Positions 1 through 59,096 of a stretch of DNA of 64,000 bases are shown piece after piece; position 1 is the first letter of the stretch, and every line of letters begins with the position of its first letter. The DNA lies in the IMG/VR virus record IMGVR_UViG_3300024259_000010, positions 1-64,000 of that record. One strand, written 5' to 3'. Both the position numbers and the translations under genes were made by a program. Below the pieces are notes generated by a model. That model searched no databases and had not been told where the DNA came from. It saw nothing but the letters and a program-made list of their open reading frames with translations.

Positions 1-328
1 TGCTTTACCTAAACCTTTATCAGCTTTCTTAATTCCTTTAAGAGCCAGACCAGGTAATGATCTATCAAACATCTTCTTACCGAATTTGCCAATAGCTTTA
101 CCAGCTTTAGATCCAGCGATCTTTCTAGCACCCATACCAACAAGACCACCAGTTGCTAAGAACTTACCAGTCTTTTTGAGAGCAGCTTTAGGATCATCAA
201 TTGCTTTACCTAAACCTTTATCAGCTTTCTTAATTCCTTTAAGAGCCAGACCAGGTAATGATCTATCAAACATCTTCTTACCGAATTTGCCAATAGCTTT
301 ACCAGCTTTAGATCCAGCGATCTTTCTA
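1..328. repeat. Exact 127-bp direct repeat (1-127 and 202-328, period 201 nt = 67 codons)
   Basis: Base-by-base comparison of the two copies. Confidence 0.95.
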
Positions 329-3300
329 CCAGCCATACCAACTAGTCCACCACCAAGAACAAATTTACCAAGTTTGGATTTACCAAGCTTAGAGTTTTTG
401 ATCTTACCAGCAATACCTCTAGCAGCCATACCAGCTAATCCACCAGTAGCCATGAATCCAGCGACCTTACCAAACTTAGTTTTCTTAAACTTAGCAAACG
501 CACCTTCATTTTCAATACCTTCTTCTTCAGCCTTCTGTCCAGCTTCCCACTCTTCTTTATCCTTAGATTCAACATCTTCAGGATTAAGTTTGCCATCAGC
601 TTTAGCAGTCATAAACTTGTTAGCCATATTTTCAGCTTCATCACGTTTACCAGCTTTGAATAAAGATTTGAATTTCTTAATGAATTTTTTAGATGCATTC
701 TTTTCAGTTAAAGTATCAACCCAGTTATCTAATTGTTGATCAGCGTAAGCACCAGCGGCCATCTTCTGAGCCTTCTCAGCTTTCTTACGAGCACGGCGCT
801 TCTTAAGTTTCTTAGCAAGTATAACACCACCTACAGCAACACCAGCAACAGCTAATGCAGGTAATAGGAATGGTGCGGCAGCAGCGGCAGCACCAGCAAT
901 GGCTGTACCAGCAGCAGCACCTGCTCCAGCAAGAGCAGTTCCAGCAGTAGCAAGACCTCCACCAATAGCACCAGCTCCAGGTATCATAGTAGCTAACCCT
1001 GCGGCTTTACTACCAAATCTACCAAGTGCCCCACCAATCTTTCCAAACTTACCTAGCTTACCAAGATTCTTGGCATTCTTACCAGCTTTCGCTAGCTTAG
1101 CAGCCTTCTTAAGTTTACGAGCATCATTCAAACCTTTGAGTGTATTACCAGTATCGATCGCTGCAGAGATACCCATACCAGCACTACCTATCTTACCTAG
1201 TAAACCAGGTTTGTTAGCTAGATTCTGCATACCACCTTTGAGCATACCTTTTGCATCAGTCATATTAGCAGGTACTTTAATTCCCCTACCTTCAGCCTTT
1301 GCCCGCATCTGATCTAAGTATGAACCTTTACGATGTACATCTTCTTCATAATCATCTTCAGCATCGTCAGCACTACCTTCATCATCCATAGGATTGGTTT
1401 TACTAGCAGTAACACCAGCACCAGCTTTACCTGTTGATCCAATAGTTGGAGAAGTTGTAGTAGGTTCACCTGTAGTTGCGCCTAACCGTGTGTTTAATAG
1501 TTCATACATAGTGGAATGGTTTTCATTAACGGCTGCAGTCAATTCTTCAACTTTAGCAGCAATACCTCCACTACCGAAACCCATATCACTTAGTTTGTCT
1601 TTAGCATATCCCATTGCTCCGAGACCTGCTTTACCTGCACCCTTAAGTATAGAGCCATAAACTCCAACACCACCAGACAACACATTAAGACCACTGCTTA
1701 GTAAACCACCAGCTCCAGCAAAAGCTCCACCTAGATCGATATGTATTCCACCACCTGCTCCATCATAAATGGATTTACCAGATACTGTAACTAGACCTTT
1801 TTCAATATCTTCTTCAGATACTAATACGTCTCCAGTTTCAGAATGAATAATAGGTGAGGTGATCTCAATTGTTTTCTTAAGTCTTTTTTTAGTCTCTGCA
1901 ACAAGACCATTCTTTTTCTGAACCTTAGCAGAAACTAGTGGACTACCAACTTTGACTTCATCTTTGATATATACATCGACAAAATTAGGTTGAACAGCTA
2001 AACCAGGAACTTTATCTACTAATGATTTAGCAAGACCGAATCCTCCTTTATAGAATTCTCCCATCATGTCTAAACCACTACCGGCTATATCACTACCACC
2101 TTTGGCTAATATACCAGCTAGATCTCCAAGTTTACCAACACCAGTTCCAAGAGCACTACCAATATGAGGAGCAGCTTGACCAGTTTTATCAGCAAGCCAT
2201 TTTCCAGCACCTTTAAGACCTTTACCATAAGTTGTAGCAACACCACCAATAGTTCGTCCAAGTTTTCCACCACCAGATTTAATACTATCTTTAGCACGTC
2301 TGGTAAGACTCTTAGTGATTTCCCACTTAGTATCTTTAATCATGTCGTCATCATCATAGCCTTCTAAACTTCCAGTTTTAGCGAATACTCTAAATGATTT
2401 ATGGAAACTCTTCATCTCTAGTAGTAATCTAGAACTACCAATAGTTTTATCTTGAACAGTACCGATTGCACCTAATGCCTGATCCTTTAAAGATACAGCA
2501 CCTTTTTTAAGACTATCAAAACCATACATGGATTTAATTGCCAAGGTTTCAGCCCCGGATGCAATCTTATCTCCAGCATACATTCCTTTAATCTGAGCTG
2601 TCTCTATACCAGATCTAGCTTTAGTCACATGACTGGATATATTCTTATCATAAAAGTCTTTAGATACGGTTCTATATTTAGTAAGCTTCTCTCTAACAGA
2701 TGCATTAGTAGCATCAACTGTTTTCATAAGTTTATCTTGGTCTTCTTCCGAGACAACCTTACTAATCTCTTTCATGATAACAGAGTTGATCTTTTTAACA
2801 CGATTGATAACAGATGGATCTTCATCTGGATCTAATTCAGCAGCTTTGTTTAATTCTTTTATTAAACTACCTACCTTCTTTTTAGATCTAGTTAGATCAG
2901 CTCTAAGTTCATCGGGAGTTTTGTTCAATTGAGTATCCACTGCATCAACTACTGATTTACCAGCACCTAATGCTTTGTCCTTAGCAGAGTTTCCAATACC
3001 AATAGCTTTTCGTTTAGCTGACATTCCAGCACTAGGCATAGGTCCAATAAAGTCAGGATCACTAGATGTGTTGCTATAAAGACCTTTCGCCTTTTTAACC
3101 CCTTGTTTAACACCATGTTTAGCTCTGTCAAATGTGTTTTTACCAGTACCCATGGCCATCTGTTTGATGGTCTGTTGTGGCATAGGTCCAACCATCTCAG
3201 GCATAGGTCCATAAAAATCACCAGAACTACTACCTGCAACATTAGAATACTCAGGTGTTTCAATTCTAATTGTCCCATCTGCATCAACAGAAATTGGAAC

Positions 3301-5442
3301 ATCACCAGATGCACCTGAAATATAAGATGCTAGATCTGATAGTAAGAATACATCTTTCTTAGCTAACTTACCAGCAGCGGTTTTAATACCGGATGGGATA
3401 TTCTGAGCAAATTTTGAATTGGTAAAATTCTCACGATCTTCTCGATAGATCATGCTTAAATCTTTTGTCTGTTGAGCTGCTCCACTTAGATAACTACCTG
3501 GATCATCAGAAAGAGAACTTTCTGCAATATTCAAACGTTCTTTATTGAGAGCATCTGTGGAAAACTGTCCACCATCTATATCATCAGCAAAAAGATTATA
3601 TGATCCAAATGTTTCCAATGTACTAGATAGTTTAGTTCTTAATGTATCATTAGCATGTGCATTATGAATACCATCATTGATAAAACTTATGTTTTCATTA
3701 TTTTTAGTACCATCAGGATTAAAATATAACGCCTTGATTAACTGGATAACTCCAATAGGGTCTTTAGTACCCTTCATCAATAATTTAATACCTCGTCCGG
3801 TCAGCTCTTCTGGTTTACTAGCAGCAGTTGCTTCTTTGATAACCCTTGCACTAATAGTAACACCATTGACAACAGCGTTGTTAATAACGATCAATAAATC
3901 TGCTTCTAATTCTTTATATGTGGATTCCTTGACAGTTGACGTCATTGCAGCTATACCTTTGATAGCACCCAATGATTCTACCATGGCTTGACCACGTTCT
4001 TCAGGAGCACCAAGCATAGATTCCATCACAGAAGCTTTAGCCTGAGTCATTGAAACGATTTTACGTTTCTTGGGATCATATGCTTCTATTTCAGTATCAG
4101 TACCAGTAACACTATCTCTAGTATTTTTAGCAATTTTAGATAACCATAGAGGTATGACTTCAACAATAGATTGACGAGTAGCGTTATCAAATACAGAGGC
4201 AGTTGCTCCTTCTTCAAATAATTGATTACCAACATCTACATGTGTCGTCTTCTTGGGTATCATGCTTCCGATTAATTTCAAAGCAATATTATCGGATTCA
4301 CTCAACGCATCGGCAAAGTCACGACCACCAGTTTTAATCTTACCTTGAACAGTTCTTGCTGTTCTATCGGCAACGTTAGCAATAGGTCTTATTTTATTAA
4401 GAGCAGATCTCCCACCGATCATACCAAGTATTGTACCAAGTGGACCACCGGCTTTCTCGCCTTTGCTTTTACCCATACCCAATTGATCAAAGTCGCCTTC
4501 CATGTCCCTTTCGACTTCCATGCTATCAATGAGCATATCGAGCATAGGAGCTAACTGTCCAATGTTATCAACCACATTTGATTTAAATCCTTTGGCAGCG
4601 CCTCCTACCATACCACTAATAGAATTAACACCAAGATCTGCAATCTTACCACGAACACTATGTTTTAAAAATTCAGCTGATTGTGCTTTTGCAACTTCAG
4701 GTAAGGCAGTGTTCTTACTAACAATAGCGATATTGTCTTCGAACGATTGTGCAAATACTTTCAATACACCAAGAGTTTCTTTAGAAGTATATAAGTGCAT
4801 ATACTTTAACTCAAGCATTTTCTTCATCCAGTCCTGCTGAGCAGAAACTGTATATTGATTTGAAAATTCTAACTGTGAGTTAATATTGGATAACATTCCA
4901 ATAGTGCTTCTATGTCTCAGTGAGTCACGGGCTTTGTCAACTAACTTATCAGCCCGAGCATGTTCATCTTTTGTCTTATTGGTACTAGCTATATTTGCAA
5001 ACATAGCTTCAGATGAAGCTCGTGCTACATTCTGTGCTTCAGAATATGCATCCTCAGCTTCAGCACCCGTTGATTCAGAAGAGGATTTGGAAAACTCTTC
5101 TAGCTTATTATACATGCCTTTTGGAATGAATCGTTTAGCAGTAGGTAAAGCAAATGCGGTAGCACGTTTTCCAACAATGGCAGCCTTACGTACTTCAGCA
5201 CGTAGTTCACCGAGTGATTCAACACCTATATCTTTTGCAGCACCTATGTCGCTTAATAACTCAGATGTATTAGGCATTGAACTTAAAATATGTTTACCAG
5301 CAGTTTTCATTCCAGCAGGTACACCTGCTTTAACTAAGTCTTTGGCATTGGAACCCAATCCCATTACTGGTTTTCTAGATTTAGGATCTATTGAATCAGA
5401 TGAATAATTACTGCTGAAATCATCAGCCATAAAACTATCCAT
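1..5442 (-). CDS. Large tail/tape-measure protein, phiKZ gp181-like (C-terminus beyond the window, >1814 aa)
   Basis: ATG at 5442 (alternative 5430). The frame was translated or spot-checked by hand to position 1 with no stop seen; it is absent from the ORF track because its stop is outside the window. Ala/Gly/Lys-rich, with FDNATRQSIVEVIPLWLSKI and VDVYIKDE segments resembling phiKZ gp181-type proteins, and a hydrophobic segment PFLLPALAVAGVAVGGVILA. Confidence 0.75.
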   Translation of the reverse strand, partial: MDSFMADDFSSNYSSDSIDPKSRKPVMGLGSNAKDLVKAGVPAGMKTAGKHILSSMPNTSELLSDIGAAKDIGVESLGELRAEVRKAAIVGKRATAFALPTAKRFIPKGMYNKLEEFSKSSSESTGAEAEDAYSEAQNVARASSEAMFANIASTNKTKDEHARADKLVDKARDSLRHRSTIGMLSNINSQLEFSNQYTVSAQQDWMKKMLELKYMHLYTSKETLGVLKVFAQSFEDNIAIVSKNTALPEVAKAQSAEFLKHSVRGKIADLGVNSISGMVGGAAKGFKSNVVDNIGQLAPMLDMLIDSMEVERDMEGDFDQLGMGKSKGEKAGGPLGTILGMIGGRSALNKIRPIANVADRTARTVQGKIKTGGRDFADALSESDNIALKLIGSMIPKKTTHVDVGNQLFEEGATASVFDNATRQSIVEVIPLWLSKIAKNTRDSVTGTDTEIEAYDPKKRKIVSMTQAKASVMESMLGAPEERGQAMVESLGAIKGIAAMTSTVKESTYKELEADLLIVINNAVVNGVTISARVIKEATAASKPEELTGRGIKLLMKGTKDPIGVIQLIKALYFNPDGTKNNENISFINDGIHNAHANDTLRTKLSSTLETFGSYNLFADDIDGGQFSTDALNKERLNIAESSLSDDPGSYLSGAAQQTKDLSMIYREDRENFTNSKFAQNIPSGIKTAAGKLAKKDVFLLSDLASYISGASGDVPISVDADGTIRIETPEYSNVAGSSSGDFYGPMPEMVGPMPQQTIKQMAMGTGKNTFDRAKHGVKQGVKKAKGLYSNTSSDPDFIGPMPSAGMSAKRKAIGIGNSAKDKALGAGKSVVDAVDTQLNKTPDELRADLTRSKKKVGSLIKELNKAAELDPDEDPSVINRVKKINSVIMKEISKVVSEEDQDKLMKTVDATNASVREKLTKYRTVSKDFYDKNISSHVTKARSGIETAQIKGMYAGDKIASGAETLAIKSMYGFDSLKKGAVSLKDQALGAIGTVQDKTIGSSRLLLEMKSFHKSFRVFAKTGSLEGYDDDDMIKDTKWEITKSLTRRAKDSIKSGGGKLGRTIGGVATTYGKGLKGAGKWLADKTGQAAPHIGSALGTGVGKLGDLAGILAKGGSDIAGSGLDMMGEFYKGGFGLAKSLVDKVPGLAVQPNFVDVYIKDEVKVGSPLVSAKVQKKNGLVAETKKRLKKTIEITSPIIHSETGDVLVSEEDIEKGLVTVSGKSIYDGAGGGIHIDLGGAFAGAGGLLSSGLNVLSGGVGVYGSILKGAGKAGLGAMGYAKDKLSDMGFGSGGIAAKVEELTAAVNENHSTMYELLNTRLGATTGEPTTTSPTIGSTGKAGAGVTASKTNPMDDEGSADDAEDDYEEDVHRKGSYLDQMRAKAEGRGIKVPANMTDAKGMLKGGMQNLANKPGLLGKIGSAGMGISAAIDTGNTLKGLNDARKLKKAAKLAKAGKNAKNLGKLGKFGKIGGALGRFGSKAAGLATMIPGAGAIGGGLATAGTALAGAGAAAGTAIAGAAAAAAPFLLPALAVAGVAVGGVILAKKLKKRRARKKAEKAQKMAAGAYADQQLDNWVDTLTEKNASKKFIKKFKSLFKAGKRDEAENMANKFMTAKADGKLNPEDVESKDKEEWEAGQKAEEEGIENEGAFAKFKKTKFGKVAGFMATGGLAGMAARGIAGKIKNSKLGKSKLGKFVLGGGLVGMAGRKIAGSKAGKAIGKFGKKMFDRSLPGLALKGIKKADKGLGKAIDDPKAALKKTGKFLATGGLVGMGARKIAGSKAGKAIGKFGKKMFDRSLPGLALKGIKKADKGLGKA

Positions 5443-5461
5443 ATTCTCTTCTTTAAACTTA

Positions 5462-6259
5462 TTATTTTTCATAAGTAATATCCATTATTACAAACTTAAA
5501 ATCACAAAATGCATTGAATACAATTTCAGTATTCTGCAATATCTGATCATCAGTTAATTTTTCGTCACCAGGCTTAACATCTTGCACTTCCTCAATAAAT
5601 GGAAATGTATGTAGTGATTTATGTACAAGTAATGTTCCAGCTTCTAGCAGAGGTTGAAATCTCCCGTGCTCCATAAACTTACCCAATTTATAGATAGACA
5701 TGTGGTCTAGGGTTGTTACAATCTCTTCACCATAATCATATATTTGGGGATCAGTTATAGTGATGTTCCAATATGACAATTCTTTTTTAAGACAAGCGAT
5801 TAATTTATCCTTACCTTCAAGTGACAATTTAACATCACCTGATCCGATGAATAGTTGAGGTACAACATTAGCATCACTACCCATTCTATTATTACCTAAA
5901 ACAGCATCGCCGAATTTAAAAAAGTATTTATAATAATCAGTAGGTGGGCTAATACGTTCTAGCTTTGCATGATTATCAGTGTCTTGCATAAATGCATATA
6001 TATCTTCATCTGTAAATTTTAGTTTAGGGAAATATTTCATAACTTTATCTTCTCTGCGATCATTATAATTCGACAGATTAGCTAGTAGATAATCATACTC
6101 TTCTTTGCTAGATATAAGACTCAATAATGCACCTATTCTAAAATCAAAAAAACAATCCAGATCAACATACAGCACACCTACTGGTGCAACTATATCTTCC
6201 ATTGCTGCACCGGCTATTGATTGTAATGAGGCTGCCACATCTCCAGACATTTTTTCCAT
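5462..6259 (-). CDS. Conserved phiKZ-like hypothetical protein
   Basis: ORF; GGAG RBS before ATG 6259; LYVDLDCFFDFRIGAL resembles a motif common in phiKZ-like phage proteins. Confidence 0.65.
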   Translation of the reverse strand: MEKMSGDVAASLQSIAGAAMEDIVAPVGVLYVDLDCFFDFRIGALLSLISSKEEYDYLLANLSNYNDRREDKVMKYFPKLKFTDEDIYAFMQDTDNHAKLERISPPTDYYKYFFKFGDAVLGNNRMGSDANVVPQLFIGSGDVKLSLEGKDKLIACLKKELSYWNITITDPQIYDYGEEIVTTLDHMSIYKLGKFMEHGRFQPLLEAGTLLVHKSLHTFPFIEEVQDVKPGDEKLTDDQILQNTEIVFNAFCDFKFVIMDITYEK

Positions 6260-25873: not shown

Positions 25874-26728
25874 ATGATTATGAATATTGATGAAGTGTAT
25901 TGCGACATGCTCCGTAAGATTATTGCGGATGGAATTACTAAAGAAAACCGTACAGGTGTAACTACTAAGTCTATTAGTGGATATATGCTTGAGTACGATA
26001 TGGCAAATGGATTCCCGTTGCTTACAACTAAGAAAATGGCGTGGAAGACTCTTCGTGTTGAGCTTGAAGGATTCATTAAAGGTGTTACTAACAAACAATG
26101 GTTTACTGACCGTGGGTGCAATATCTGGAATGAATGGTGTAATCCTCAGAAGGTTGCTTATGGACATGATGAAGAGACTCAAGCTAAGATGAAAGCTGAA
26201 GATGATCTTGGTGTTATCTATGGATCACAATGGCGTAACTTCAATGGTGAAGATTGTGACCAGTTGGCTATTGCTATTGATAAACTTAAGAACAATCCCG
26301 AGTGTCGTCGTAATATTGTTATGGCTTGGAATCCTCTTAAGCTTGATCAGATGGCTTTAGTGCCTTGCCACTTCGGTTTCCAACTATTAGCTAATAACGG
26401 TACACTAGATTTACTATGGAGTCAGCGTAGTTGTGATAGCTTCCTCGGGATTCCTTTTAACATTGCCTCTTATGGTTTGCTACTAGAGCTTATTGCTAAA
26501 GAGTGTGGATTAAAAGCCGGTAAGCTTATTGGATTCCTCGGTGATGTACATATCTATGAAAACCATATGGATGTCATTGAAGAGCAACTTAATCGTAAAC
26601 CCCTCACTGCGCCTACATTGAATCTTAATGGTGATCTGTATAACAGTATCTTTGATTGGGAATGGGATCATGCTACTCTATTGGGATATGATTGTCATCC
26701 TGCACTAAAGGGTGCTGTAGCCGTATAA
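25874..26728 (+). CDS. thyA: Thymidylate synthase
   Basis: NRTGVTT, FPLLTTKK, LVPCH, QRSCDSFLGIPFNIASY, GDVHIYENH. Confidence 0.98.
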   Translation: MIMNIDEVYCDMLRKIIADGITKENRTGVTTKSISGYMLEYDMANGFPLLTTKKMAWKTLRVELEGFIKGVTNKQWFTDRGCNIWNEWCNPQKVAYGHDEETQAKMKAEDDLGVIYGSQWRNFNGEDCDQLAIAIDKLKNNPECRRNIVMAWNPLKLDQMALVPCHFGFQLLANNGTLDLLWSQRSCDSFLGIPFNIASYGLLLELIAKECGLKAGKLIGFLGDVHIYENHMDVIEEQLNRKPLTAPTLNLNGDLYNSIFDWEWDHATLLGYDCHPALKGAVAV

Positions 26729-29741: not shown

Positions 29742-30422
29742 ATGTTGATTGTTGTTGAAGGACCGGACATGAGTGGTAAGTCCACTATTGCAAAAAAGTT
29801 ATATGAAAAAATGGTTGGGTTGTATGGTGAAGATAAAGTAATCCTTACACGAGAACCAGGTGGATCAGAAACAGGTGAAGCTATTCGTGGTGTACTTGCT
29901 GCTGGATTAGATATGGGTGACAAATGTGAGTTGCTTTTATTTGAAGCAGCGCGTGCTGAGTTTGTACGTAAAGTATTGAAACCTCATTTGGAAGAAGATA
30001 AGATTGTTATCACCGACAGATTCTTCCATTCAACTATTGCGTATCAAGGATTCGGAAGAGAACTTGGTTGTGAGATGATTAATGAGTTGAACTTATATGC
30101 TCTTGATGATATTGGTAAATATAAAAATGTTACGTTAATCAATATGTTAACATTAGAAGAAGCCGATACACGTTCTGATCGTAACAAAGATGAAGACGTT
30201 GGTGGATTCGATAAAGCAGGTCGTGAAATCAAAGAACGTATCTTTGATGGTTATGGTGTTATGGCGCATGATATCTCTGTTCTACATCAAGGTTATAAAT
30301 CTGATAATGTACATCGTATCAATGCTGCATTACCACCTAATGATCACTTCAATCAAGTGGTTGATATATTACGACCGTATGTTGATGTATGGTCATCTGA
30401 ACGTGGGTTGCCAGGTATCTGA
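29742..30422 (+). CDS. tmk: Thymidylate kinase
   Basis: VEGPDMSGKST, TREPGG, ITDRF, AYQG. Confidence 0.95.
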   Translation: MLIVVEGPDMSGKSTIAKKLYEKMVGLYGEDKVILTREPGGSETGEAIRGVLAAGLDMGDKCELLLFEAARAEFVRKVLKPHLEEDKIVITDRFFHSTIAYQGFGRELGCEMINELNLYALDDIGKYKNVTLINMLTLEEADTRSDRNKDEDVGGFDKAGREIKERIFDGYGVMAHDISVLHQGYKSDNVHRINAALPPNDHFNQVVDILRPYVDVWSSERGLPGI

Positions 30423-39967: not shown

Positions 39968-40717
39968 ATGATTGTAGATATTTTTTGTAGAACATGTGAT
40001 AAAGATGTTAAATGGTTAGAGTTGTCATTACCTTCATGGATTCATTTTTTTAAAGGATATAGATCTATAAAGATTGTTGGTATTGAAAATGAATGTTGTA
40101 AAATTAAACGAATATGTGATATGTATAATGTTGAATTTGTACCAGATAATAATAGTGCCGTTATTCAAGATGGTAACATTAATCATCAGTATTCTAAATT
40201 ATGTGCCGATTTATTAACTGATGCATCATATGTGTTATTTATGAATAGTGTTACATTCTGCTATGAAGAGATTGATATTAATACGCATATTATAAATGAC
40301 AAGCCTATAGTTCAGTATTGTAACTGGGATAAAAGATTTAGGGGATATGTTTGGTGTAAACCAACTTGTGAATTTATGAAAATAGATACGCCTTATAATT
40401 TTATGTGTAATATGCCGTTTATATATCCAACAAGTGTGATACGTGACACACGTAAATATATAGAAGATGTTAATTGTAAAAAGTTAGTTGATCTATTAAA
40501 AAATGTGAAAGAAAGTATTGGTGGTGTTAGTGAATATAATTTATTAGGTTGTTATGCTTATCTATTTTGTAACGATATGTTTAATTGGATAAATATAGTT
40601 GAAGATAATGAGATATTTACTGGATTACACGATTTTTTTAAATTTGGTAGCTTAAACCAAATAAAAGAATTTAATTATGTATCTATAGAAGAAAGAGAAT
40701 CAGAACATGGATATTAA
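39968..40717 (+). CDS. Glycosyltransferase-like protein (DUF6492-like, DxD degenerate)
   Basis: IFCRTCDKD..WL, QYSKLCAD, VLFMNSV and SEYNLLG patterns; family call from recall. Confidence 0.55.
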   Translation: MIVDIFCRTCDKDVKWLELSLPSWIHFFKGYRSIKIVGIENECCKIKRICDMYNVEFVPDNNSAVIQDGNINHQYSKLCADLLTDASYVLFMNSVTFCYEEIDINTHIINDKPIVQYCNWDKRFRGYVWCKPTCEFMKIDTPYNFMCNMPFIYPTSVIRDTRKYIEDVNCKKLVDLLKNVKESIGGVSEYNLLGCYAYLFCNDMFNWINIVEDNEIFTGLHDFFKFGSLNQIKEFNYVSIEERESEHGY

Positions 40718-41207
40718 AAAACCTAATGATATACAAGTAGGAATACATGTAGAATCAAAACAAGCTATATGTGATCAACGTATATTACATGTAGCTAGTG
40801 ATATTGCTGGGTGGAGTAAAAATAGAAAACGCAAAGTTGGATGTGTTATTACTAATGATAGAGGTGATGTAGTGTCCACAGGATGTAATGGATTTCCTAG
40901 AGGTATTGATGATAATATTGAAGAACGCCATATATCACCATTAAAACATCTATTTGTTGAACATGCAGAACGCAACGCTATTTATAATGCCGCTGCTGCT
41001 GGATCAGCCGTGAGAGACTGTACTCTCTATTCCACATTATACCCATGTGCCGAATGCGCTAAAGCTATTATACAATCTAGTATTAAAAGACTTGTGACTT
41101 ATCCACCTGATTGGGATGATAAAAGATATAAAGAATCATTTGCTGTATCAAAACAAATGTTCGATGAAGTTGGAATTGAGATAACCTTCTATGACGTACC
41201 TCAGTAA
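40707..41207 (+). CDS. dCMP deaminase
   Basis: KVGCVI, GCNGFPRG, HAERNA, PCAECAKAIIQ. Confidence 0.95.
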   Translation: MDIKKPNDIQVGIHVESKQAICDQRILHVASDIAGWSKNRKRKVGCVITNDRGDVVSTGCNGFPRGIDDNIEERHISPLKHLFVEHAERNAIYNAAAAGSAVRDCTLYSTLYPCAECAKAIIQSSIKRLVTYPPDWDDKRYKESFAVSKQMFDEVGIEITFYDVPQ

Positions 41208-42855: not shown

Positions 42856-43311
42856 ATGAGTAAACATGAATGTGTAGGTGAGATATTTGGGAGGATAGAT
42901 GAATTTGATTCCTCTTTGAATATGGTAACATATGTGGTAGGAGAATCACCTAGTCTATCAGCAGCAGAAAAGTTAAGTGTTCTTAGTGTTATAGAATATA
43001 TTAAGAAAGTTAACAGAGCATTAGGAAGTGATATTTATAAATCTAAATTTGTAAGTATTAAAGAAGAAGACTTTGATCATATGAGATCTCTCACAGAAAC
43101 TTTCGGATTAGATCTATCTGATGAGTTTGTAGACTTCTACTCACTACCATCTATTTATATCAATGAATGTCGTGTCCGTGCAAGAGCAGTTGAGAGATCG
43201 TTTTTAAAACATGTAAAAATTAGGAAATTAGATATTGATGAGAAGTTACTAGACTTTATCAATGAGATAAATAGATTGCTATTTTTAATAGCATGTGATT
43301 TAAATAAATAA
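42856..43311 (+). CDS. PduO-type cob(I)alamin adenosyltransferase-like protein (divergent)
   Basis: GRIDEFDSSL, CRVRARAVER and FINEINRLLFLIA align with the PduO motifs GtvDElns, aRtvcRRAER and yLNRLSDllF. Confidence 0.65.
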   Translation: MSKHECVGEIFGRIDEFDSSLNMVTYVVGESPSLSAAEKLSVLSVIEYIKKVNRALGSDIYKSKFVSIKEEDFDHMRSLTETFGLDLSDEFVDFYSLPSIYINECRVRARAVERSFLKHVKIRKLDIDEKLLDFINEINRLLFLIACDLNK

Positions 43312-44500: not shown

Positions 44501-46204
44501 ATGAAAAGTAAATGGATATTTAAAAGCCCCCCTATAGAAGATGTAGATATGGTGTGTAAGCTAACAGGTATGCCTCATCCAATCGCTAAACACTTAGCAA
44601 GCATTGGAATGACCACCAATGAAAAGTTAGAAGAATACTTACATCCTAACTACTCTAAACTTCTAGACCCGTTTGATATTCCAGTGATGGAAGATGCATG
44701 TACTAGAATTTGGAAATGTATTTTGGAGAATAAACTCATCTTAGTATATGGAGATTATGATGTAGATGGTATTACATCGTCTGCTTTACTAACACGAGCA
44801 CTTAAGAAACTTAATGCTAATGTAGATGTATTTGTACCATCTAGGAAAGATGGATATGGATTCTCCATTCCAACTATGGAAAAGGTATTAAAAGATTTAG
44901 ATCCAACATTAGTGATAACAGTTGACTGTGGTATTAATTCTAAAGACACTGCTGATTTCTTAGAATCAAAAGGTATTGATGTTATTATTACAGATCATCA
45001 TGAACCTGATGAAACAGTAGCCCTTCCTCATTTGATCATTAACCCTAAACTCTTTGACATCCCAAGAATCTTGAATATGTCTGGAGCCGGTGTAGCGTTT
45101 AAATTAGTCCAAGGAATATTGGACTTTGGTCGACGCTATAAGCACGCTGGGTCGTTTGAGACTGACTGCCTTGACTTCATTGATATTGCCACTCTAGGAA
45201 CTGTTGCAGATATTGTACCACTCCAAGAAGAGAATCGTATTATTGCTAATGAAGGTCTTAAGGTAATGCCTACGACTAAGAATCCAGGTATTAAAGCATT
45301 GTTAAATCTTTGCGGACTCTATGATAAAGTAGATGCCTCAAATATTAGTTTCAAGCTTGCACCTAGAATCAATGCCGTTGGACGCATGGGTAATCCTCGT
45401 AAAGCATTAGATCTGTTATTGACTGATGATATTTGTGTAGCTAACCAACTTGCTATTGAGATTGATAATCTTAATATTGAGAGACGTATTTTAACTACAT
45501 CTATCGAACAAGAAGCGTTGAAGTATATTGATAAGAATATTGATATTGCTAAAACACGTAGTATTGTTGTGGTTGATAAATGGGATGATGGTGTGTTAGG
45601 TATTATTGCATCTCGTATTACAGAGAAATATAATATCCCAGCTATTGTTATGACGTTGGATGAAGAGAAAGGTGTTGCTAAAGGATCATGTCGTAGTGTT
45701 GACCAAATCAGTATCCTTGATGGACTGAACATGTGTAGTGATTTACTTACACGTTTTGGTGGACATAAATACGCGGCTGGATTAGAACTACCTATTGCGA
45801 ACTTAGAAGAGTTTACCAAGAAGATTGATATTGCTATTAGAACACAAGTGCCTGATAATGTTATCCTTGAACCTAAGATTAAAGTAACCTCATTGATTGA
45901 AGAGTCCGATGTTAACTGGGACTTCATTGAAAATGTAAATAAACTTGAACCATTTGGTTATGATAATCAAGAACCTAGATGGTGTTTGAAAGAAGTAAAG
46001 ATTATTTATTCTAAGTTAATTAATGATAAACATCTGCAATTAACATTAGATATAAATGGTAAACCTGTGAAAGCTATTATGTTTAATTACAACGTAGCTA
46101 TTGATTCGGGAACATATGTTGATCTAGTATTCTACCTTAAGGAGAATAACTGGAAAGGTAATATGTCTATCCAACTACACATTATTGATTTAGATATTGT
46201 TTAA
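44501..46204 (+). CDS. recJ: Single-stranded-DNA-specific exonuclease RecJ
   Basis: GDYDVDG, ITVDCG, TDHHE, LGTVADIVPL, APRINAVGR, GSCRS, GGHKYAAG. Confidence 0.97.
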   Translation: MKSKWIFKSPPIEDVDMVCKLTGMPHPIAKHLASIGMTTNEKLEEYLHPNYSKLLDPFDIPVMEDACTRIWKCILENKLILVYGDYDVDGITSSALLTRALKKLNANVDVFVPSRKDGYGFSIPTMEKVLKDLDPTLVITVDCGINSKDTADFLESKGIDVIITDHHEPDETVALPHLIINPKLFDIPRILNMSGAGVAFKLVQGILDFGRRYKHAGSFETDCLDFIDIATLGTVADIVPLQEENRIIANEGLKVMPTTKNPGIKALLNLCGLYDKVDASNISFKLAPRINAVGRMGNPRKALDLLLTDDICVANQLAIEIDNLNIERRILTTSIEQEALKYIDKNIDIAKTRSIVVVDKWDDGVLGIIASRITEKYNIPAIVMTLDEEKGVAKGSCRSVDQISILDGLNMCSDLLTRFGGHKYAAGLELPIANLEEFTKKIDIAIRTQVPDNVILEPKIKVTSLIEESDVNWDFIENVNKLEPFGYDNQEPRWCLKEVKIIYSKLINDKHLQLTLDINGKPVKAIMFNYNVAIDSGTYVDLVFYLKENNWKGNMSIQLHIIDLDIV

Positions 46205-46347
46205 GATGGATAAGAATATAGAAGTAGTGGCTTGGTAGTGTTTCTCATGTGGTCAACGTGCTACAGATAGTGAGATCTGTTTTGGATGTAATGAACCAAA
46301 TATCCAGCCACAGCATAAATGAATATTAAAAGGAGTACAGAATTAAA

Positions 46348-47886
46348 ATGGAAGAAGTTAAGAACATTGTAGAAGTCGAATCATTGTCAGAACTAAAGAT
46401 TCTTGTCAATGGAAAAAAGCATGTTGTAGTAAAGTTATGGGCACCTTGGTGTGGTCCTTGTAAAACCTTTGCACCTATTGTAAACAAAGTTAACAGTGAA
46501 CTCGAATTAGACGTAAGTATTGTTGGAGTAGATGTTGATGCTGTCCCGATTGTTGCGGCTGTGTATGGAGTACGTAGTATTCCTACTCTACTAATGTTTG
46601 AAGATGGCGAATGTAGGAAACAGATTCAAGGTATAGTTCCTGAGCACCAGCTCAAAGAACTTATCGCTGATTTTGTTAATGGTGTAGAAGAAGAATTAAC
46701 TGAGGAGGTACAAGTTGAAAAACCCATTGATACAGTTGAAACTGAAGTTGAAGTCGCTACAGAGAGTCAGACAGATGAGAAGGGAACGCACCAAGATGAT
46801 GATGAATCGGATGTGGTTGGAGAATTAGAAGAAGCTCCATCTATTCCTGAAGAAGTCGTCGAGGCTGAAGTACCAGGTGATAGTGAACCACCATCGGTGA
46901 AGCAGGAAGGATCTATCTTTGCCGCCTCTCCCGATGCAACATTAGTTACTGAAGAAACTCCAGGTATTGGTAAGGTGACTGCTATTGAACGTGGTGATGA
47001 AGGAACTGTATTAGATGTGCCCAATCAAGAGCAAGGGACTGTGTCAGATGTTAAGGTTGAAAACAGAGCATTGACTGAAAAAGAGATACAGGAAGAACTT
47101 GATGCTGTTAAGCCTATTGATGTTGTAATACACCCTGAGTTGCTTACTAAAGATGAGGTAGTGGAAGAAGCAGTTGCCACTAGTGATCGTGTTAAGCAAA
47201 CCTCACCAGGTATTGTATTACCTACTGAAGATGAAACAGTTCTTGAATGTCCTATCCAAGATTGTGCCTATAATGAAGCTTGTGAATGTGCATTTGCTGA
47301 AGCTACTATTCAGACTATTGCACCACCATGTGGTAATGTACCGAATGAATGTCCTGCAGTAATTAATAATACCTCAGATCAAGAAAAATCACTACCACCT
47401 GATCAAGATTGGAATGAAGAAAAAGATATTGATGTAGATCGTCGTCATAATCATTTCAAGATTAAAGCAACAGCTGCACATGTTCACGCTATGTATCAAG
47501 ATCATGAACACTATCATGAAGGCGATGCTGGATTGGATCTATTCATTGCTGAAGATCAGATTATCCCAGTTGGTCTTGGTAACAAGATTGATCTATGTAT
47601 TGTCTGTGAACCGGAAGATGGTATTGCATATGAGCTATGGCCTCGTAGTAGTATCTCTAAGACTCCTCTCCGTCTTGCCAATAGTATTGGTTTGATTGAT
47701 GGTGGTTACCGTGGACACATCATGGCTGTGGTTGATAACTTTGGTCCAGTTGGCTATGAGATTAACGCTGGTACTCGTTTGTTCCAACTTGTTGCTGCTG
47801 ATAAGATGCCTATTACATTTGAGATGGTAACTGAAGTATCAGAGACCGCTCGTGGTACAGGTGGGTTCGGTAGTACTGGAGCTTAA
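46348..47886 (+). CDS. dut: Thioredoxin - acidic linker - Cys-rich module - dUTPase fusion
   Basis: N-terminal WAPWCGPC; C-terminal AGLDL, PRSS, GLIDGGYRG, QLV, RGTGGFGSTG; a single 512-aa ORF. Confidence 0.92.
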   Translation: MEEVKNIVEVESLSELKILVNGKKHVVVKLWAPWCGPCKTFAPIVNKVNSELELDVSIVGVDVDAVPIVAAVYGVRSIPTLLMFEDGECRKQIQGIVPEHQLKELIADFVNGVEEELTEEVQVEKPIDTVETEVEVATESQTDEKGTHQDDDESDVVGELEEAPSIPEEVVEAEVPGDSEPPSVKQEGSIFAASPDATLVTEETPGIGKVTAIERGDEGTVLDVPNQEQGTVSDVKVENRALTEKEIQEELDAVKPIDVVIHPELLTKDEVVEEAVATSDRVKQTSPGIVLPTEDETVLECPIQDCAYNEACECAFAEATIQTIAPPCGNVPNECPAVINNTSDQEKSLPPDQDWNEEKDIDVDRRHNHFKIKATAAHVHAMYQDHEHYHEGDAGLDLFIAEDQIIPVGLGNKIDLCIVCEPEDGIAYELWPRSSISKTPLRLANSIGLIDGGYRGHIMAVVDNFGPVGYEINAGTRLFQLVAADKMPITFEMVTEVSETARGTGGFGSTGA

Positions 47887-47894
47887 TTAAATTA

Positions 47895-47940
47895 AATATA
47901 AGATACTACACCGTAATGGTGTAGTATCTTATATTTTTTT
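47895..47940. terminator. Bidirectional terminator hairpin at a convergent junction
   Basis: 18-bp IR with GTAAT loop. Confidence 0.85.
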
Positions 47941-47942
47941 AT

Positions 47943-48722
47943 TTAATCAGCAACAACAGTAACTGTATATACAACACCGTTATCGGTAAACTTAAGAACT
48001 CCACCTACCACAGATAGTGTATCTTCTGCATTAAGCTCAACATCACCAGGTGCAGTAGCAGTATCAACATAAGCCTTAACAGACTCAGCACTAGCTACAT
48101 TAGAATCAGTAGCAGTAGCCATAGTATCGTCATCAATGATAGTAACTAGACCAGTAACTGCCGTAGATAAATCCTCCGCTACTGTAACAGGTGGGCCATA
48201 TGGTCCTTGTTCAGTTTCTCCATTTCCAATCGCGAAACCCGCCTGTGTAAGATCTATGTCGGTGTGTCTTGCCCAATCCCCAACTTTAGAGCCTAGCGTG
48301 TCACTAACATACCATCTATCAGTCGCCCACCAGAATGTCTTCGTAGCCCCTACGTAAACATTTTCCCCATTATACTGAGTCTCGGCTGTAGGGTATACAC
48401 CTGCTGGTATTCTAGCGTCACCGCCTGTTACAACAATACCAATAGTTTGTCCTCCCACAGCAGCTGCTGGTGTAGCATCAGTGATAGCTGTCTCTAAAGC
48501 ATTAGACACAACTAGGTCTGCTGCAATATATGCATCTGCAGTAGCTACAACGTTAGTAAGTTCTGCAAGATCAACCCCTGATGAGATCAACCGACCAGTA
48601 TGTGCGCTAACAACTGGGATATCACCTGGTACAAGCCTAATCCCTTTAATATTTCTAGTTTGCCCCATGGCACCACCTGCGATTAAGCAAGCTAATGTAA
48701 TTAGTAATCCTGTCTTCTTCAT
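47943..48722 (-). CDS. Signal-peptide-bearing, Thr/Ala/Val-rich protein (virion fibre-like)
   Basis: MKKTGLLITLACLIAGGAMG signal; PVVSAHTGRL shared with 19058-19354. Confidence 0.7.
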   Translation of the reverse strand: MKKTGLLITLACLIAGGAMGQTRNIKGIRLVPGDIPVVSAHTGRLISSGVDLAELTNVVATADAYIAADLVVSNALETAITDATPAAAVGGQTIGIVVTGGDARIPAGVYPTAETQYNGENVYVGATKTFWWATDRWYVSDTLGSKVGDWARHTDIDLTQAGFAIGNGETEQGPYGPPVTVAEDLSTAVTGLVTIIDDDTMATATDSNVASAESVKAYVDTATAPGDVELNAEDTLSVVGGVLKFTDNGVVYTVTVVAD

Positions 48723-48822
48723 AATTATAACCTTTCCTATTCCCACATACTCATACGTCAGTGTCGAGTATTATATGTCTCATATAATGATTCTTTATAT
48801 ATTTAATTTTTTTCATCATTGA

Positions 48823-57088: not shown

Positions 57089-58675
57089 ATGAAAAAAGAA
57101 GAAGGTGAAGTAGATATCAATCTTCTTGTACCATTTTATTTAATGAGTTCATTCTTATATTACAAAGAGGACCTAAGTCCCCTAACTGATCATAAGTATG
57201 ATATGCTATGTAAGAAACTCCTGAAGCATTGGGATGACATTGAGCATCAGCATAAGAAGTATATAGATAAAGAAGCACTTAGTTCTGGAACTGGTTACTA
57301 CATCAATTGGGATGAGTTGCCATCTAGGATAAAAGGCGGTGCAAAGCATTGGTATGAGGTAGCTAGGTCAGAAATGCCTAGTTTGAATAAATTTATAAAA
57401 AAAGGAAAGTCTATGAATGATGGACAACAGGTGTTTGTATTATCATGTGGTGATATGGATAGCATTATGGCTTCAAAGATTATTTGCAAAGCCATCCCAG
57501 GGAGCATACATCTTGCTGCCTCCAGAAAACAAATAGATGTCCCAAATGGTTCTCTAATATATTTAGTGAGACCTTACATGGGTTATCGTAGAATTTGTGA
57601 TCTCTTACATAATTATGAAGTACGTCTAATTGATTACGATGTGAGTGATGAATATAAGTCGAAAGATCTTCTTGAATCAAATGGTTGTAAAACTACTTGG
57701 GTTAAGACCAAAGAGAATGTTCTATCAGAAGTTGTCTGGGATATGTTCTTCAATGGTAAAGAGAAGCCAGAGATTATCAAACATGTTCGTGATTACATGA
57801 AATGGGAATTCCAAATAGAAAACACATTAGCTATTCATTATGGGTATGAGTTGATCATACCTAAGTTTGGCTCAAATAGCTCTGTGTTTGGTAAGCTTTT
57901 GGATAACGACGTAGATGCTCTAAATCATCTCAAGGCAGGTGGTCTGGAAATAAAAGGGTACGTAGACTTCGTTAATTCAGAGTTATTAAAAGAACTTGGA
58001 TTTTCAGCAACTATAGATGGACGACCAGTTATCTGTGCAAATATTGCTGGAGTGAATTCACTATTCTTTAATGTGGATGGAACTCAAATAGATTCATATG
58101 ATATTGCTCAGACATTTTATTATGTACCAGCTAACAATATGGTCCACAGTGCTATCTATGCTATCTCAGATGATATCGATGTGGGTAAGCTAGCATCAGA
58201 TCATTTTCAAGGTGGTGGTAATAGAGGAGCTGCTGGTTTCAATACTAGAGGATTACCATTTGATAAGATTGAAGCTGAGACTATGGGCACTACAGATTAT
58301 GAAGGTATGATCAAAGCTTCAATTAAATCATCTAACATTATTCAGTATGTTAAATCTAAAATACATGGATGGCCTCGTAATACGTTCTATGGAACATGGA
58401 GAGGTATGTCTGCAGTATTTTACAACACACCATTCTTAATTGGTACCGACTTCTTTGAGAAGATGGATACTCGTGGTTGTGATGTACGAGTAACATTCTG
58501 TATGTTAGGTAATGGACATTATCGAATTGCATGTAAAGGTAAAGATGGGTTCCCATTGCCTGATGAATTCGGTAAGAAGGTTGATGCATATTCAATTGAG
58601 ACACTCCCTGAATTAGTTCACGCTACATTCACTAAGGGTGAAATCAAGAAAGATATGTTTTTCGAGAAATCATAA
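57089..58675 (+). CDS. LigA-Ia-like N-terminal domain fused to a degenerate DHH/DHHA1 phosphoesterase
   Basis: SFLYYKEDLSPLTDHKYDML resembles the NAD-ligase Ia module; GDMDS, LIDYD (for IDHH), VRDYMKWEF, GGGNRGAAGF. Confidence 0.65.
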   Translation: MKKEEGEVDINLLVPFYLMSSFLYYKEDLSPLTDHKYDMLCKKLLKHWDDIEHQHKKYIDKEALSSGTGYYINWDELPSRIKGGAKHWYEVARSEMPSLNKFIKKGKSMNDGQQVFVLSCGDMDSIMASKIICKAIPGSIHLAASRKQIDVPNGSLIYLVRPYMGYRRICDLLHNYEVRLIDYDVSDEYKSKDLLESNGCKTTWVKTKENVLSEVVWDMFFNGKEKPEIIKHVRDYMKWEFQIENTLAIHYGYELIIPKFGSNSSVFGKLLDNDVDALNHLKAGGLEIKGYVDFVNSELLKELGFSATIDGRPVICANIAGVNSLFFNVDGTQIDSYDIAQTFYYVPANNMVHSAIYAISDDIDVGKLASDHFQGGGNRGAAGFNTRGLPFDKIEAETMGTTDYEGMIKASIKSSNIIQYVKSKIHGWPRNTFYGTWRGMSAVFYNTPFLIGTDFFEKMDTRGCDVRVTFCMLGNGHYRIACKGKDGFPLPDEFGKKVDAYSIETLPELVHATFTKGEIKKDMFFEKS

Positions 58676-58712: not shown

Positions 58713-58796
58713 TTATATAGAATTGAACCAATAACGTAATTAACTGTTAGAGAAATTATGATAGTTATCAAAGATGGAAATAAGGAGAGTATAGTC

Positions 58797-59096
58797 ATGA
58801 GTGAAGTAGAAAAAGAACAAGAAGAAGTTACTTCTGAAGAAGAAGTGGTTGAAGAAGAAATCATCGAAGAAGAAGTTGTAGAAGTAGTCGCTGAAGAAAC
58901 ACCGGTTGAAGTAGCAGATAATAAGACTGTGGCCAAGGTACCGTTTAAAGAACGGGTATCGGAAGTTGCTTCAACTGCTAAATATGCAGTTTCGGATTCG
59001 TATGTAAAGCATCCAAAAGTATGGAAGACTGTTGGGCTTTGCGCACTCGTAGGAACATGTGCCTTCTTAGGTGCGCGTGCTGGTTCTGATGATTAA
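58797..59096 (+). CDS. Acidic protein with a C-terminal membrane anchor
   Basis: AAGGAG RBS; Glu-rich N-terminus; C-terminal TM. Confidence 0.75.
   Translation: MSEVEKEQEEVTSEEEVVEEEIIEEEVVEVVAEETPVEVADNKTVAKVPFKERVSEVASTAKYAVSDSYVKHPKVWKTVGLCALVGTCAFLGARAGSDD

What the first reader, a model, noticed from the sequence alone, without database searches (positions are those of the whole stretch)
46348..47886. Thioredoxin-dUTPase fusion with a ~190-aa acidic linker and a Cys cluster
One ORF joins WCGPC thioredoxin, a long Glu/Val/Pro-rich low-complexity tract, a CPIQDCAYNEACEC module (DUF1540-like spacing) and a trimeric dUTPase with all five motifs. Trimerisation would display three tethered thioredoxins. 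Inference: a scaffold coupling ribonucleotide reduction to dUTP removal, or a moonlighting signalling protein, as known for staphylococcal phage dUTPases.
Basis: partly seen in the sequence, partly recalled or inferred. Interest (0 to 1): 0.6.

Follow-up and report, generated by a model that had tools for sequence, protein, structure and literature searches.

The report
Phage thioredoxin–dUTPase fusion protein
A 236-kb marine phage carries one intact gene that joins a normal thioredoxin to a complete trimeric dUTPase through about 255 residues of unique, mostly acidic sequence; I found this combination nowhere else, its two enzyme parts are ordinary, and its purpose is untested.

Summary
Window 46348-47886 (+) is one 512-aa ORF:
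- a canonical thioredoxin (res 1-112, WCGPC);
- a 185-aa acidic tract (113-297, net charge -41);
- a six-Cys element (298-340) and a short spacer (341-367);
- a complete homotrimer-type dUTPase (368-512), colinear with 145-aa stand-alone bacterial enzymes and keeping all five motifs.

The ORF is identical in four assemblies. Variant strains in three further seawater runs show no indel or stop in the parts they cover.

No other protein combined the two domains in 50,697 phage records, in 165 long dUTPase proteins from 5.8 billion clusters, or in the top 150 of 1.84 billion representatives. The middle 255 residues are orphan. The DUF1540 likeness is sub-threshold, and the Cys element seems not to be kept in a close variant strain.

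A trimer model of the dUTPase part passes its controls, so three tethered thioredoxins are plausible.

The phage encodes dCMP deaminase, ThyA and dTMP kinase. It has no RNR of any class, no thioredoxin reductase and no family-A polymerase. The RNR-scaffold idea therefore has only a host enzyme to act on, and the staphylococcal moonlighting idea has no support.

Verdict: a real, new domain architecture made of known parts. Functional coupling between the two enzymes is unproven.

The parts
46329..46335 (+). Shine-Dalgarno-like AAAGGAG; its GGAG ends 12 nt before the ATG
   Evidence: Read directly from the sequence printed
46348..47886 (+). Whole fusion gene, 512 codons plus stop
   Evidence: the identical product is called on four contigs from JGI, ENA and Logan assemblies
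46348..46683 (+). Thioredoxin domain, res 1-112. WCGPC is at 34-38 (nt 46447-46461) and the cis-Pro is P79. The usual buried Asp is Lys29.
   Evidence: Pfam PF00085 82 bits; alignment A3; AF2 model with A3 has mean pLDDT 91.6 and beta-alpha-beta-alpha-beta-alpha-beta-beta-alpha topology; PDB thioredoxins to 2e-23
46684..47238 (+). Acidic E/V/T/D/P-rich linker, res 113-297, probably disordered
   Evidence: Composition and charge-hydropathy; no Pfam, PDB or fetched-protein match; variant-strain contigs cover most of it (to 47234) with substitutions only and no indels
47239..47367 (+). Six-Cys element, res 298-340 (C301, C306, C312, C314, C328, C335); orphan
   Evidence: DUF1540 is sub-threshold; no Atlas look-alike; variant contigs diverge from the window just before it starts, after 47234
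47368..47448 (+). Hydrophilic spacer, res 341-367
   Evidence: Charge-hydropathy; homologous but diverged in a variant strain, which reads ISEEKDIDVT against WNEEKDIDVD
47449..47883 (+). Complete homotrimer-type dUTPase, res 368-512, with motifs I-V
   Evidence: Pfam PF00692; colinear with 145-aa stand-alone Duts, where N368 aligns with their Met1; pLDDT above 90; trimer model 0.92 against control 0.00; closest PDB entries 1VYQ/3T60
47894..47936 (.). Bidirectional intrinsic terminator (20-bp stem) between this gene and the convergent gene at 47943-48746

Best explanation
This is a genuine single gene of an uncultured marine jumbo phage, and it encodes a bifunctional nucleotide-supply protein.

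Shown by computation:
- The C-terminal 145 residues are a whole dUTPase that assembles as a homotrimer.
- The N-terminal 112 residues are a classical thioredoxin with an intact CGPC redox site.
- The 255 residues between them are lineage-specific and mostly acidic low-complexity sequence.

Inferred:
- The trimeric core hydrolyses dUTP to dUMP and PPi. This keeps uracil out of the AT-rich phage DNA and feeds the phage's own ThyA and dTMP kinase, alongside its dCMP deaminase.
- Each subunit carries one thioredoxin on a flexible arm. The host's thioredoxin reductase recharges it, and it most probably passes electrons to the host's ribonucleotide reductase. Fusion would then give 1:1 expression and co-location of two dNTP-supply activities.

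The two enzymes may well act independently. Coupling between them is the weakest step.
For: Gene integrity:
- The ORF is identical in four assemblies.
- Variant strains in three further seawater runs show no indels or stops in the covered parts.
- There is no internal start with an SD that could give a separate dUTPase.
- A terminator occurs only after the stop codon.

Domains:
- Both Pfam hits are far above their cut-offs.
- Every invariant dUTPase residue is kept, and the domain is fully colinear with stand-alone enzymes.
- The trimer model scores 0.92 against a best control of 0.00, run agreement is at least 29%, partner pLDDT is at least 68, and contacts fall only in 393-487. In calibration, 20 of 30 solved pairs and 1 of 23 single chains reached the mark.
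- The Trx model has pLDDT 91.6.

Context:
- ThyA is at 25874-26728 and dTMP kinase at 29742-30422.
- dCMP deaminase is at 40707-41207.
- This gene provides the only Trx and the only dUTPase in the genome.
- The phage has no TrxR or Grx, so a host reductase is needed.

Literature: a phage-encoded thioredoxin (Syn5) is redox-active and raises phage genome replication. Its authors think RNR activation is the likelier route (bioRxiv 10.1101/2025.10.05.680603).
Against: - The roughly 91%-complete genome has no RNR of any class, so the proposed Trx client is hypothetical and belongs to the host.
- The near-invariant buried Asp of thioredoxins is Lys29 here, which may alter redox kinetics.
- No RNA run holds the gene, so expression and the size of the product are unknown.
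- The architecture occurs in a single lineage, so conservation cannot argue for coupling.
- The linker resembles acidic tracts in nine other ORFs of this phage, so it may not be specific to this protein's function.
Confidence: 0.6

Rival explanations
1. Neutral or accidental fusion. Two independent genes (trx and dut), perhaps with small acidic or Cys-rich ORFs between them, were joined in frame. The domains work separately, and the tether has no role beyond not harming either enzyme.
For: - The architecture is a singleton.
- The dUTPase begins exactly where stand-alone enzymes have Met1.
- The middle has no relatives.
- The Cys element appears not to be conserved in a close variant.
- Acidic tracts are common in this phage.
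Against: - The 255-codon middle stays open in all assemblies, and in variant strains where covered.
- None of the 80 nearest bacterial dut loci has a trx within 3 kb, so there is no obvious neighbour pair to fuse.
- Another phage-like contig also fuses a closely related Trx to a nucleotide-metabolism-like domain through a P/V/E/K linker (P0006), which hints at a recurring theme.
Confidence: 0.28
2. Polyprotein: the chain is cut in the linker by a phage or host protease after synthesis, releasing free thioredoxin and free dUTPase.
For: A long exposed acidic linker is an easy protease substrate. Processing of jumbo-phage proteins is known (my own knowledge). No data here exclude it.
Against: No protease site or protease gene was identified here, and there is no proteomic evidence.
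Confidence: 0.06
3. Regulatory, moonlighting dUTPase of the staphylococcal-phage kind, or a Trx used as a T7-like polymerase processivity factor that brings dUTPase to the replisome.
For: Both precedents exist in phages (my own knowledge; T7 case summarised).
Against: - The dUTPase has no extra variable insertion relative to 145-aa housekeeping enzymes.
- The genome has no family-A DNA polymerase.
Confidence: 0.04
4. Assembly or sequencing artefact that joins two genes.
For: The source is metagenomic. The WCGPC region attracts fragments of other organisms' thioredoxins in the read lay-out.
Against: - The identical 512-aa product comes from four contigs made by different assemblers.
- One 6,082-nt Logan contig spans the whole laid stretch with 0 differences.
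- Variant contigs bridge Trx to linker (46480-46990) and spacer to dUTPase.
Confidence: 0.02

Closest known systems
Homotrimeric dUTPase (Dut, PF00692): the subfamily of 145-aa enzymes of marine Kiritimatiellales/Pontiella and Marinimicrobia, and Plasmodium falciparum dUTPase (PDB 1VYQ, 3T60)
   Same: Residues 368-512 are 56-65% identical to these enzymes and colinear end to end, with all five motifs. The P. falciparum enzyme is by far the best solved match, at 125.7 bits against 46.8 for E. coli Dut. A trimer is predicted.
   Different: It carries a 367-residue N-terminal extension that none of these relatives has. On a quick tree it sits on a long branch outside both bacterial clades.
Classical thioredoxin (TrxA / m-type, PF00085), including phage-encoded thioredoxins such as that of cyanophage Syn5
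   Same: It has WCGPC, the cis-Pro and the Trx fold. Like the Syn5 Trx, it sits in a marine phage among replication and nucleotide-metabolism genes.
   Different: It is fused rather than free-standing, the buried Asp26 equivalent is Lys29, and this phage has no RNR of its own.
Other multi-domain dUTPases: tandem double or triple dUTPases, RNase H-dUTPase, acetyltransferase-dUTPase and intein-bearing dUTPases
   Same: They show that dUTPase tolerates fusion at its N-terminus.
   Different: None of the 165 long dUTPase proteins found carries a thioredoxin domain.
T4 dNTP-synthetase complex (my own knowledge: a multi-enzyme complex containing dCTPase/dUTPase, dTMP synthase, RNR and others, with a phage redoxin feeding RNR)
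   Same: The idea is the same: dUTP removal, thymidylate synthesis and the RNR reductant are held together.
   Different: In T4 the association is non-covalent and the RNR is phage-encoded. Here two members are covalently linked and no phage RNR exists. This is a 'works like' analogy only.
P0006, a 297-aa protein on a 51.7-kb phage-like marine contig
   Same: It is the closest Trx relative among proteins of 282 aa or longer (51% identity). It is also a fusion, through a short P/V/E/K-rich linker, to a nucleotide-metabolism-like domain.
   Different: The partner is a sub-threshold nucleoside 2-deoxyribosyltransferase-like domain (22.8 bits against 30), the Trx is C-terminal, and the linker is about 20 aa.

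Membership tests
Thioredoxin (PF00085) | Profile match above the curated cut-off | tested here: met
   82.2 bits against 23.5; 85.7 bits in the genome search
Thioredoxin (PF00085) | CGPC redox motif and the cis-proline loop | tested here: met
   W34-C35-G-P37-C38 and P79 are invariant columns in A3
Thioredoxin (PF00085) | Trx fold (beta-alpha-beta-alpha-beta-alpha-beta-beta-alpha) | tested here: met
   AF2 model with A3: mean pLDDT 91.6, pTM 0.83, elements in the expected order
Thioredoxin (PF00085) | Buried Asp (E. coli D26) that assists the resolving Cys | tested here: not met
   Asp in at least 90% of the aligned relatives, Lys29 in this protein. From my own knowledge this residue is not essential for activity.
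Thioredoxin (PF00085) | Disulfide-reductase activity with a thioredoxin reductase | not testable with these tools
   Needs an insulin or DTNB assay
Homotrimeric dUTPase (PF00692) | Profile match above the curated cut-off | tested here: met
   58.2 bits against 22; 61.7 bits in the genome search; phrog_135 at 5e-32
Homotrimeric dUTPase (PF00692) | Five conserved motifs, including the C-terminal glycine-rich motif V | tested here: met
   All invariant and near-invariant columns of 56 homologues are kept, as are all 46 invariant columns of A4
Homotrimeric dUTPase (PF00692) | Homotrimer | tested here: met
   Prediction only. Three copies of res 296-512 give ipSAE 0.92 against a best control of 0.00, with contacts at 393-487. 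A like complex has been solved, so the pass may partly be from memory.
Homotrimeric dUTPase (PF00692) | dUTP-specific hydrolysis | not testable with these tools
   Needs an enzyme assay
DUF1540 (PF07561) | Profile match above the curated cut-off | tested here: not met
   12.4 bits against 22.1, E 0.18, covering 24 of 40 profile positions; no match at E<=10 in the genome search
Staphylococcal-phage signalling dUTPases | Extra variable insertion ('motif VI') used for repressor binding (my own knowledge) | tested here: not met
   The domain has 145 residues against 145 in housekeeping relatives, with no indel
T7-type Trx-polymerase pair | Family-A DNA polymerase in the phage | tested here: not met
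   No PF00476 match in the genome

The most novel reading that the evidence does not exclude
The acidic E/V/T/P-rich tract is a shared address or condensate-forming tag, not a passive tether. This phage puts it on about ten proteins. It would gather them, together with a trimeric hub carrying three thioredoxins, into a replication or dNTP 'factory'. The host RNR would be recruited there and kept reduced while dUTP is destroyed on the spot.
Probability: 0.08. Interest if true: 0.7.

Novelty: new variant of a known kind. Interest (0 to 1): 0.38.

Why it matters
The first functional tests of phage-encoded thioredoxins are only now appearing. A natural covalent link between a thioredoxin and a dNTP-pool enzyme, in a phage without its own RNR, would be a clean handle on what such thioredoxins act on. 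If the tethered Trx serves the host RNR, the protein would be a minimal, hard-wired version of a dNTP-synthesising complex. If the fusion turns out to be accidental, it remains a curiosity of one phage lineage.

Tried and rejected
- Composite alignment A1 (query plus Trx pieces plus dUTPases): MAFFT stacked the Trx pieces on the dUTPase domain, so I discarded it.
- Full-length AF2 with dUTPase rows only: the Trx control, which had no alignment rows, also scored low. Low pLDDT in the linker and Cys element therefore says nothing about disorder. Composition was used instead.
- The search for related loci with the whole protein and with RecJ in viral contigs found nothing. In metagenome contigs it returned only the window's own contig and an unrelated weak hit on a human-gut metagenome contig (L006). 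That contig is microbial, and I left it aside and did not use it.
- Attempts to fetch the variant strain failed. The exact loose-end pattern in viral contigs gave 0 hits, and a stand-alone word search with res 230-470 gave only ordinary 145-aa dUTPases.
- P0002 (VWA domain plus half a dUTPase on a 1.6-kb contig) looks chimeric or uninformative.
- The two-stretch hits of about 225 aa that could have been compact fusions are all double thioredoxins. P0121 and P0157 are tandem dUTPases.
- The orphan middle gave nothing in Pfam at E<=10, in PDB at E<=10, in the Atlas (scores 0.76-0.77, TM<=0.32) or against 385 fetched proteins.
- The circularity test was inconclusive. The ENA record is not held, the first-gene look-up failed, and the joined ends give a stop two codons after the junction.
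- The dUTPase tree is a quick tree only, because the careful search did not finish. The query sits on a long branch (0.9) with an atypical composition, so no donor or host can be named.
- The other acidic-tract proteins have no annotation.
- The variant substitutions number 11 codons, 9 of them non-synonymous, at depth 2-7. That is too few for dN/dS.

Full report
**What is there**

Window 46348-47886 (+) is a single open frame of 512 codons. Pfam finds Thioredoxin at residues 19-107 (3e-23) and dUTPase at 390-511 (1e-15), both far above their curated cut-offs. PHROGs gives the same two labels.

I divide the protein into five parts:
- Trx, residues 1-112.
- An acidic linker, 113-297: 185 aa, E37 V27 T18 D16 P13, 53 acidic against 12 basic residues and one aromatic. 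It lies on the disordered side of the charge-hydropathy plot.
- A six-Cys element, 298-340 (C301, C306, C312, C314, C328, C335).
- A hydrophilic spacer, 341-367.
- dUTPase, 368-512.

A GGAG lies 12 nt before the ATG. A 20-bp-stem bidirectional terminator follows the stop at 47894-47936, ahead of a convergent gene.

The other two forward frames carry 24 and 80 stops, and no in-frame start with an SD could give a separate dUTPase.

**Is the fusion real?**

The window is the first 64 kb of a 235,833-bp IMG/VR virus record from seawater, rated 91% complete.

- The identical 512-aa product is called on four contigs from JGI, ENA (236,983 bp) and Logan assemblies.
- One 6,082-nt Logan contig matches the whole laid stretch (45800-48800) without a difference.
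- Three further seawater runs hold close variant strains. Their contigs cross Trx into the linker (46480-46990, 46982-47234) and the spacer into the dUTPase (47440-47881), with substitutions only and no indel or stop.
- All of these are contigs, not raw reads, and no RNA run holds the gene. Expression and the size of the product remain untested.

An assembly artefact is very unlikely.

**The two enzymes**

*dUTPase.* Residues 368-512 align end to end, without a gap, with 145-aa stand-alone dUTPases at 57-63% identity. N368 sits where those enzymes have Met1, and all 46 invariant columns are kept. Against 56 homologues, every invariant or near-invariant residue of motifs I-V is present.

The AF2 model of this part has pLDDT above 90. 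Three copies of residues 296-512 give a trimer model with ipSAE 0.92 against a best control of 0.00. Run agreement is at least 29% and partner pLDDT at least 68. In the tool's calibration, 20 of 30 solved pairs and 1 of 23 single chains reached the mark. That calibration used two copies and its own alignments, so the counts hold only roughly here. All confident contacts lie in 393-487 and none in the Cys element. dUTPase trimers have been solved, so the pass shows likeness to them, not a measurement.

The best solved match by sequence is the Plasmodium falciparum enzyme (1VYQ/3T60, 125.7 bits), against 46.8 bits for E. coli Dut.

*Thioredoxin.* The domain keeps WCGPC, the cis-Pro and G87. With its own alignment it folds at mean pLDDT 91.6 in the canonical topology. 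It matches classical bacterial and m-type thioredoxins in the PDB. One departure is that the near-invariant buried Asp (E. coli D26) is Lys29.

**The middle 255 residues**

- Pfam gives nothing for 108-300 even at E<=10. For 285-375 the only hit is DUF1540 at E 0.18, 12.4 bits against a cut-off of 22.1.
- A genome-level DUF1540 search at E<=10 finds nothing.
- There is no PDB match at E<=10, no Atlas look-alike above chance and no match among 385 fetched proteins.
- Variant-strain contigs stop matching the window exactly between 47234 and 47440. The visible loose end reads ..TVEEEAP where the window has ..TVLECP. On the other side, ISEEKDIDVT faces WNEEKDIDVD.

The spacer is therefore homologous but diverged, and the first Cys may be absent in a close relative. 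That weakens any claim that the Cys element is a conserved functional module. Only about ten variant residues are visible on each side.

Acidic E/V/T/P-rich tracts of the same kind occur in 10 of this phage's 248 ORFs. None of the others has an annotation.

**Is the architecture known?**

I did not find it anywhere else.
- tblastn against 50,697 phage records: 671 records match one domain or the other, and none has a place covering 80% of the query.
- Word search with the whole protein: the query is a one-member cluster with no full-length relative.
- Word search restricted to residues 296-512, with candidates of 282-896 aa: 165 long dUTPase proteins. These include tandem dUTPases, RNase H-, acetyltransferase- and intein-bearing forms. 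Only the query carries PF00085.
- Exhaustive phmmer over 1.84 billion representatives: the top 150 are stand-alone or tandem dUTPases and multi-Trx proteins. I checked every plausible two-stretch hit, and none combines the two domains.
- Full-text search found no paper on such a fusion.

The limits are that only the top 150 were seen and that word searches need shared 5-mers.

**Origin**

The nearest cellular dUTPases belong to marine Kiritimatiellales/Pontiella and Marinimicrobia, at 56-63% identity. On a quick tree the phage domain sits on a long branch outside both clades, so no donor or host can be named. None of those 80 bacterial loci has a Trx-like ORF within 3 kb of dut (the HMM control gives 3e-40). 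The fusion is therefore not a read-through of a conserved neighbour pair.

**Context and mechanism**

The window encodes ThyA (25874-26728), dTMP kinase (29742-30422), dCMP deaminase (40707-41207), a RecJ-type exonuclease directly upstream (44501-46204) and a second DHH-domain protein (57089-58675).

The genome search finds no class I, II or III RNR, no ThyX, no family-A polymerase, no thioredoxin reductase and no glutaredoxin. It finds no other Trx or dUTPase either.

The ENA contig of almost the same length carries the gene at about 111.6 kb instead of 46.3 kb. This suggests circularly permuted assemblies of a nearly whole genome, which is an inference. It makes the absence of an RNR more credible, but I could not close the circle.

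The best-supported role is dUTP removal and dUMP supply for the phage's own thymidylate branch, carried out by a trimeric core. The Trx must be recharged by the host reductase. Its client is unknown. By analogy with the Syn5 phage thioredoxin, the likeliest client is an RNR, and here that could only be the host's. The Syn5 protein is redox-active, raises genome replication, and its authors think it acts on RNR.

Nothing supports a T7-type polymerase role (no PolA) or a staphylococcal-type signalling Dut (no extra insertion). A neutral fusion in which the two enzymes act independently fits the data almost as well.

**Verdict**

This is a real and apparently unique domain architecture built from two ordinary enzymes and an orphan acidic tether. 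It is a new variant of a known kind. Interest is moderate, because function-level claims rest on inference and on a single lineage.

Noticed in passing
window 25874-26728, 29742-30422, 40707-41207: The phage carries a thymidylate branch: ThyA (4.5e-91), thymidylate kinase (1.9e-28) and dCMP deaminase (3.4e-23). It has no RNR of any class. This fits salvage of dCMP and dUMP into dTTP for a 35% GC genome.
   Followed up: partly
window 42856-43311: A PduO-type cobalamin adenosyltransferase-like gene (PF01923, 1e-7, 32.7 bits against 24) lies 3 kb upstream. Adenosylcobalamin is the cofactor of class II RNR, so a link to a host RNR is conceivable but untested.
   Followed up: no
window 1-5472 (-): An ORF of at least 1,824 aa runs off the start of the contig. 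Its visible end is Gly/Lys/Ala-rich. Joining the contig ends gives a stop two codons later, and a sister assembly is about 1.15 kb longer, so a short piece is probably missing at the contig ends.
   Followed up: partly
window 58758-59096; genome 74752-76335, 82628-83353, 85605-86084, 94717-97353, 116051-120037, 138774-139580, 157042-158838, 184026-184604: Nine further ORFs of this phage carry acidic E/V/T/P-rich low-complexity tracts like the linker. One of them (116051-120037) mixes Cys into the acidic repeats. None has a functional annotation.
   Followed up: partly
window 47234-47440: Close variant strains in three other seawater runs diverge from the window exactly over the Cys element. 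At its start they read EEEAP where the window has LECP.
   Followed up: partly
P0006 (Logan contig, 51.7 kb): The closest Trx relative among proteins of 282 aa or longer is itself a fusion: a sub-threshold nucleoside 2-deoxyribosyltransferase-like domain, a P/V/E/K-rich linker and Trx. It sits on a phage-like contig.
   Followed up: partly
window 44501-46204 and 57089-58675: The window holds two DHH-family proteins. One is a full RecJ (DHH, DHHA1, RecJ_OB). The other is a 528-aa protein with a DNA-ligase-like N-terminal domain followed by a DHH phosphoesterase match.
   Followed up: no
window 47943-48746 (-): The convergent downstream gene (267 aa) begins with a signal-peptide- or lipoprotein-like N-terminus and has no family match in Pfam or PHROGs.
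   Followed up: no
P0121, P0157, P0271-P0273, P0275: Relatives of this dUTPase subfamily include double and triple tandem dUTPases on one chain. One comes from a marine eukaryote transcriptome. There is also an RNase H-dUTPase fusion.
   Followed up: partly
window 46432-46434 (Lys29): The thioredoxin's buried Asp (E. coli D26) is replaced by Lys. Only one of the 20 aligned relatives shares this.
   Followed up: no
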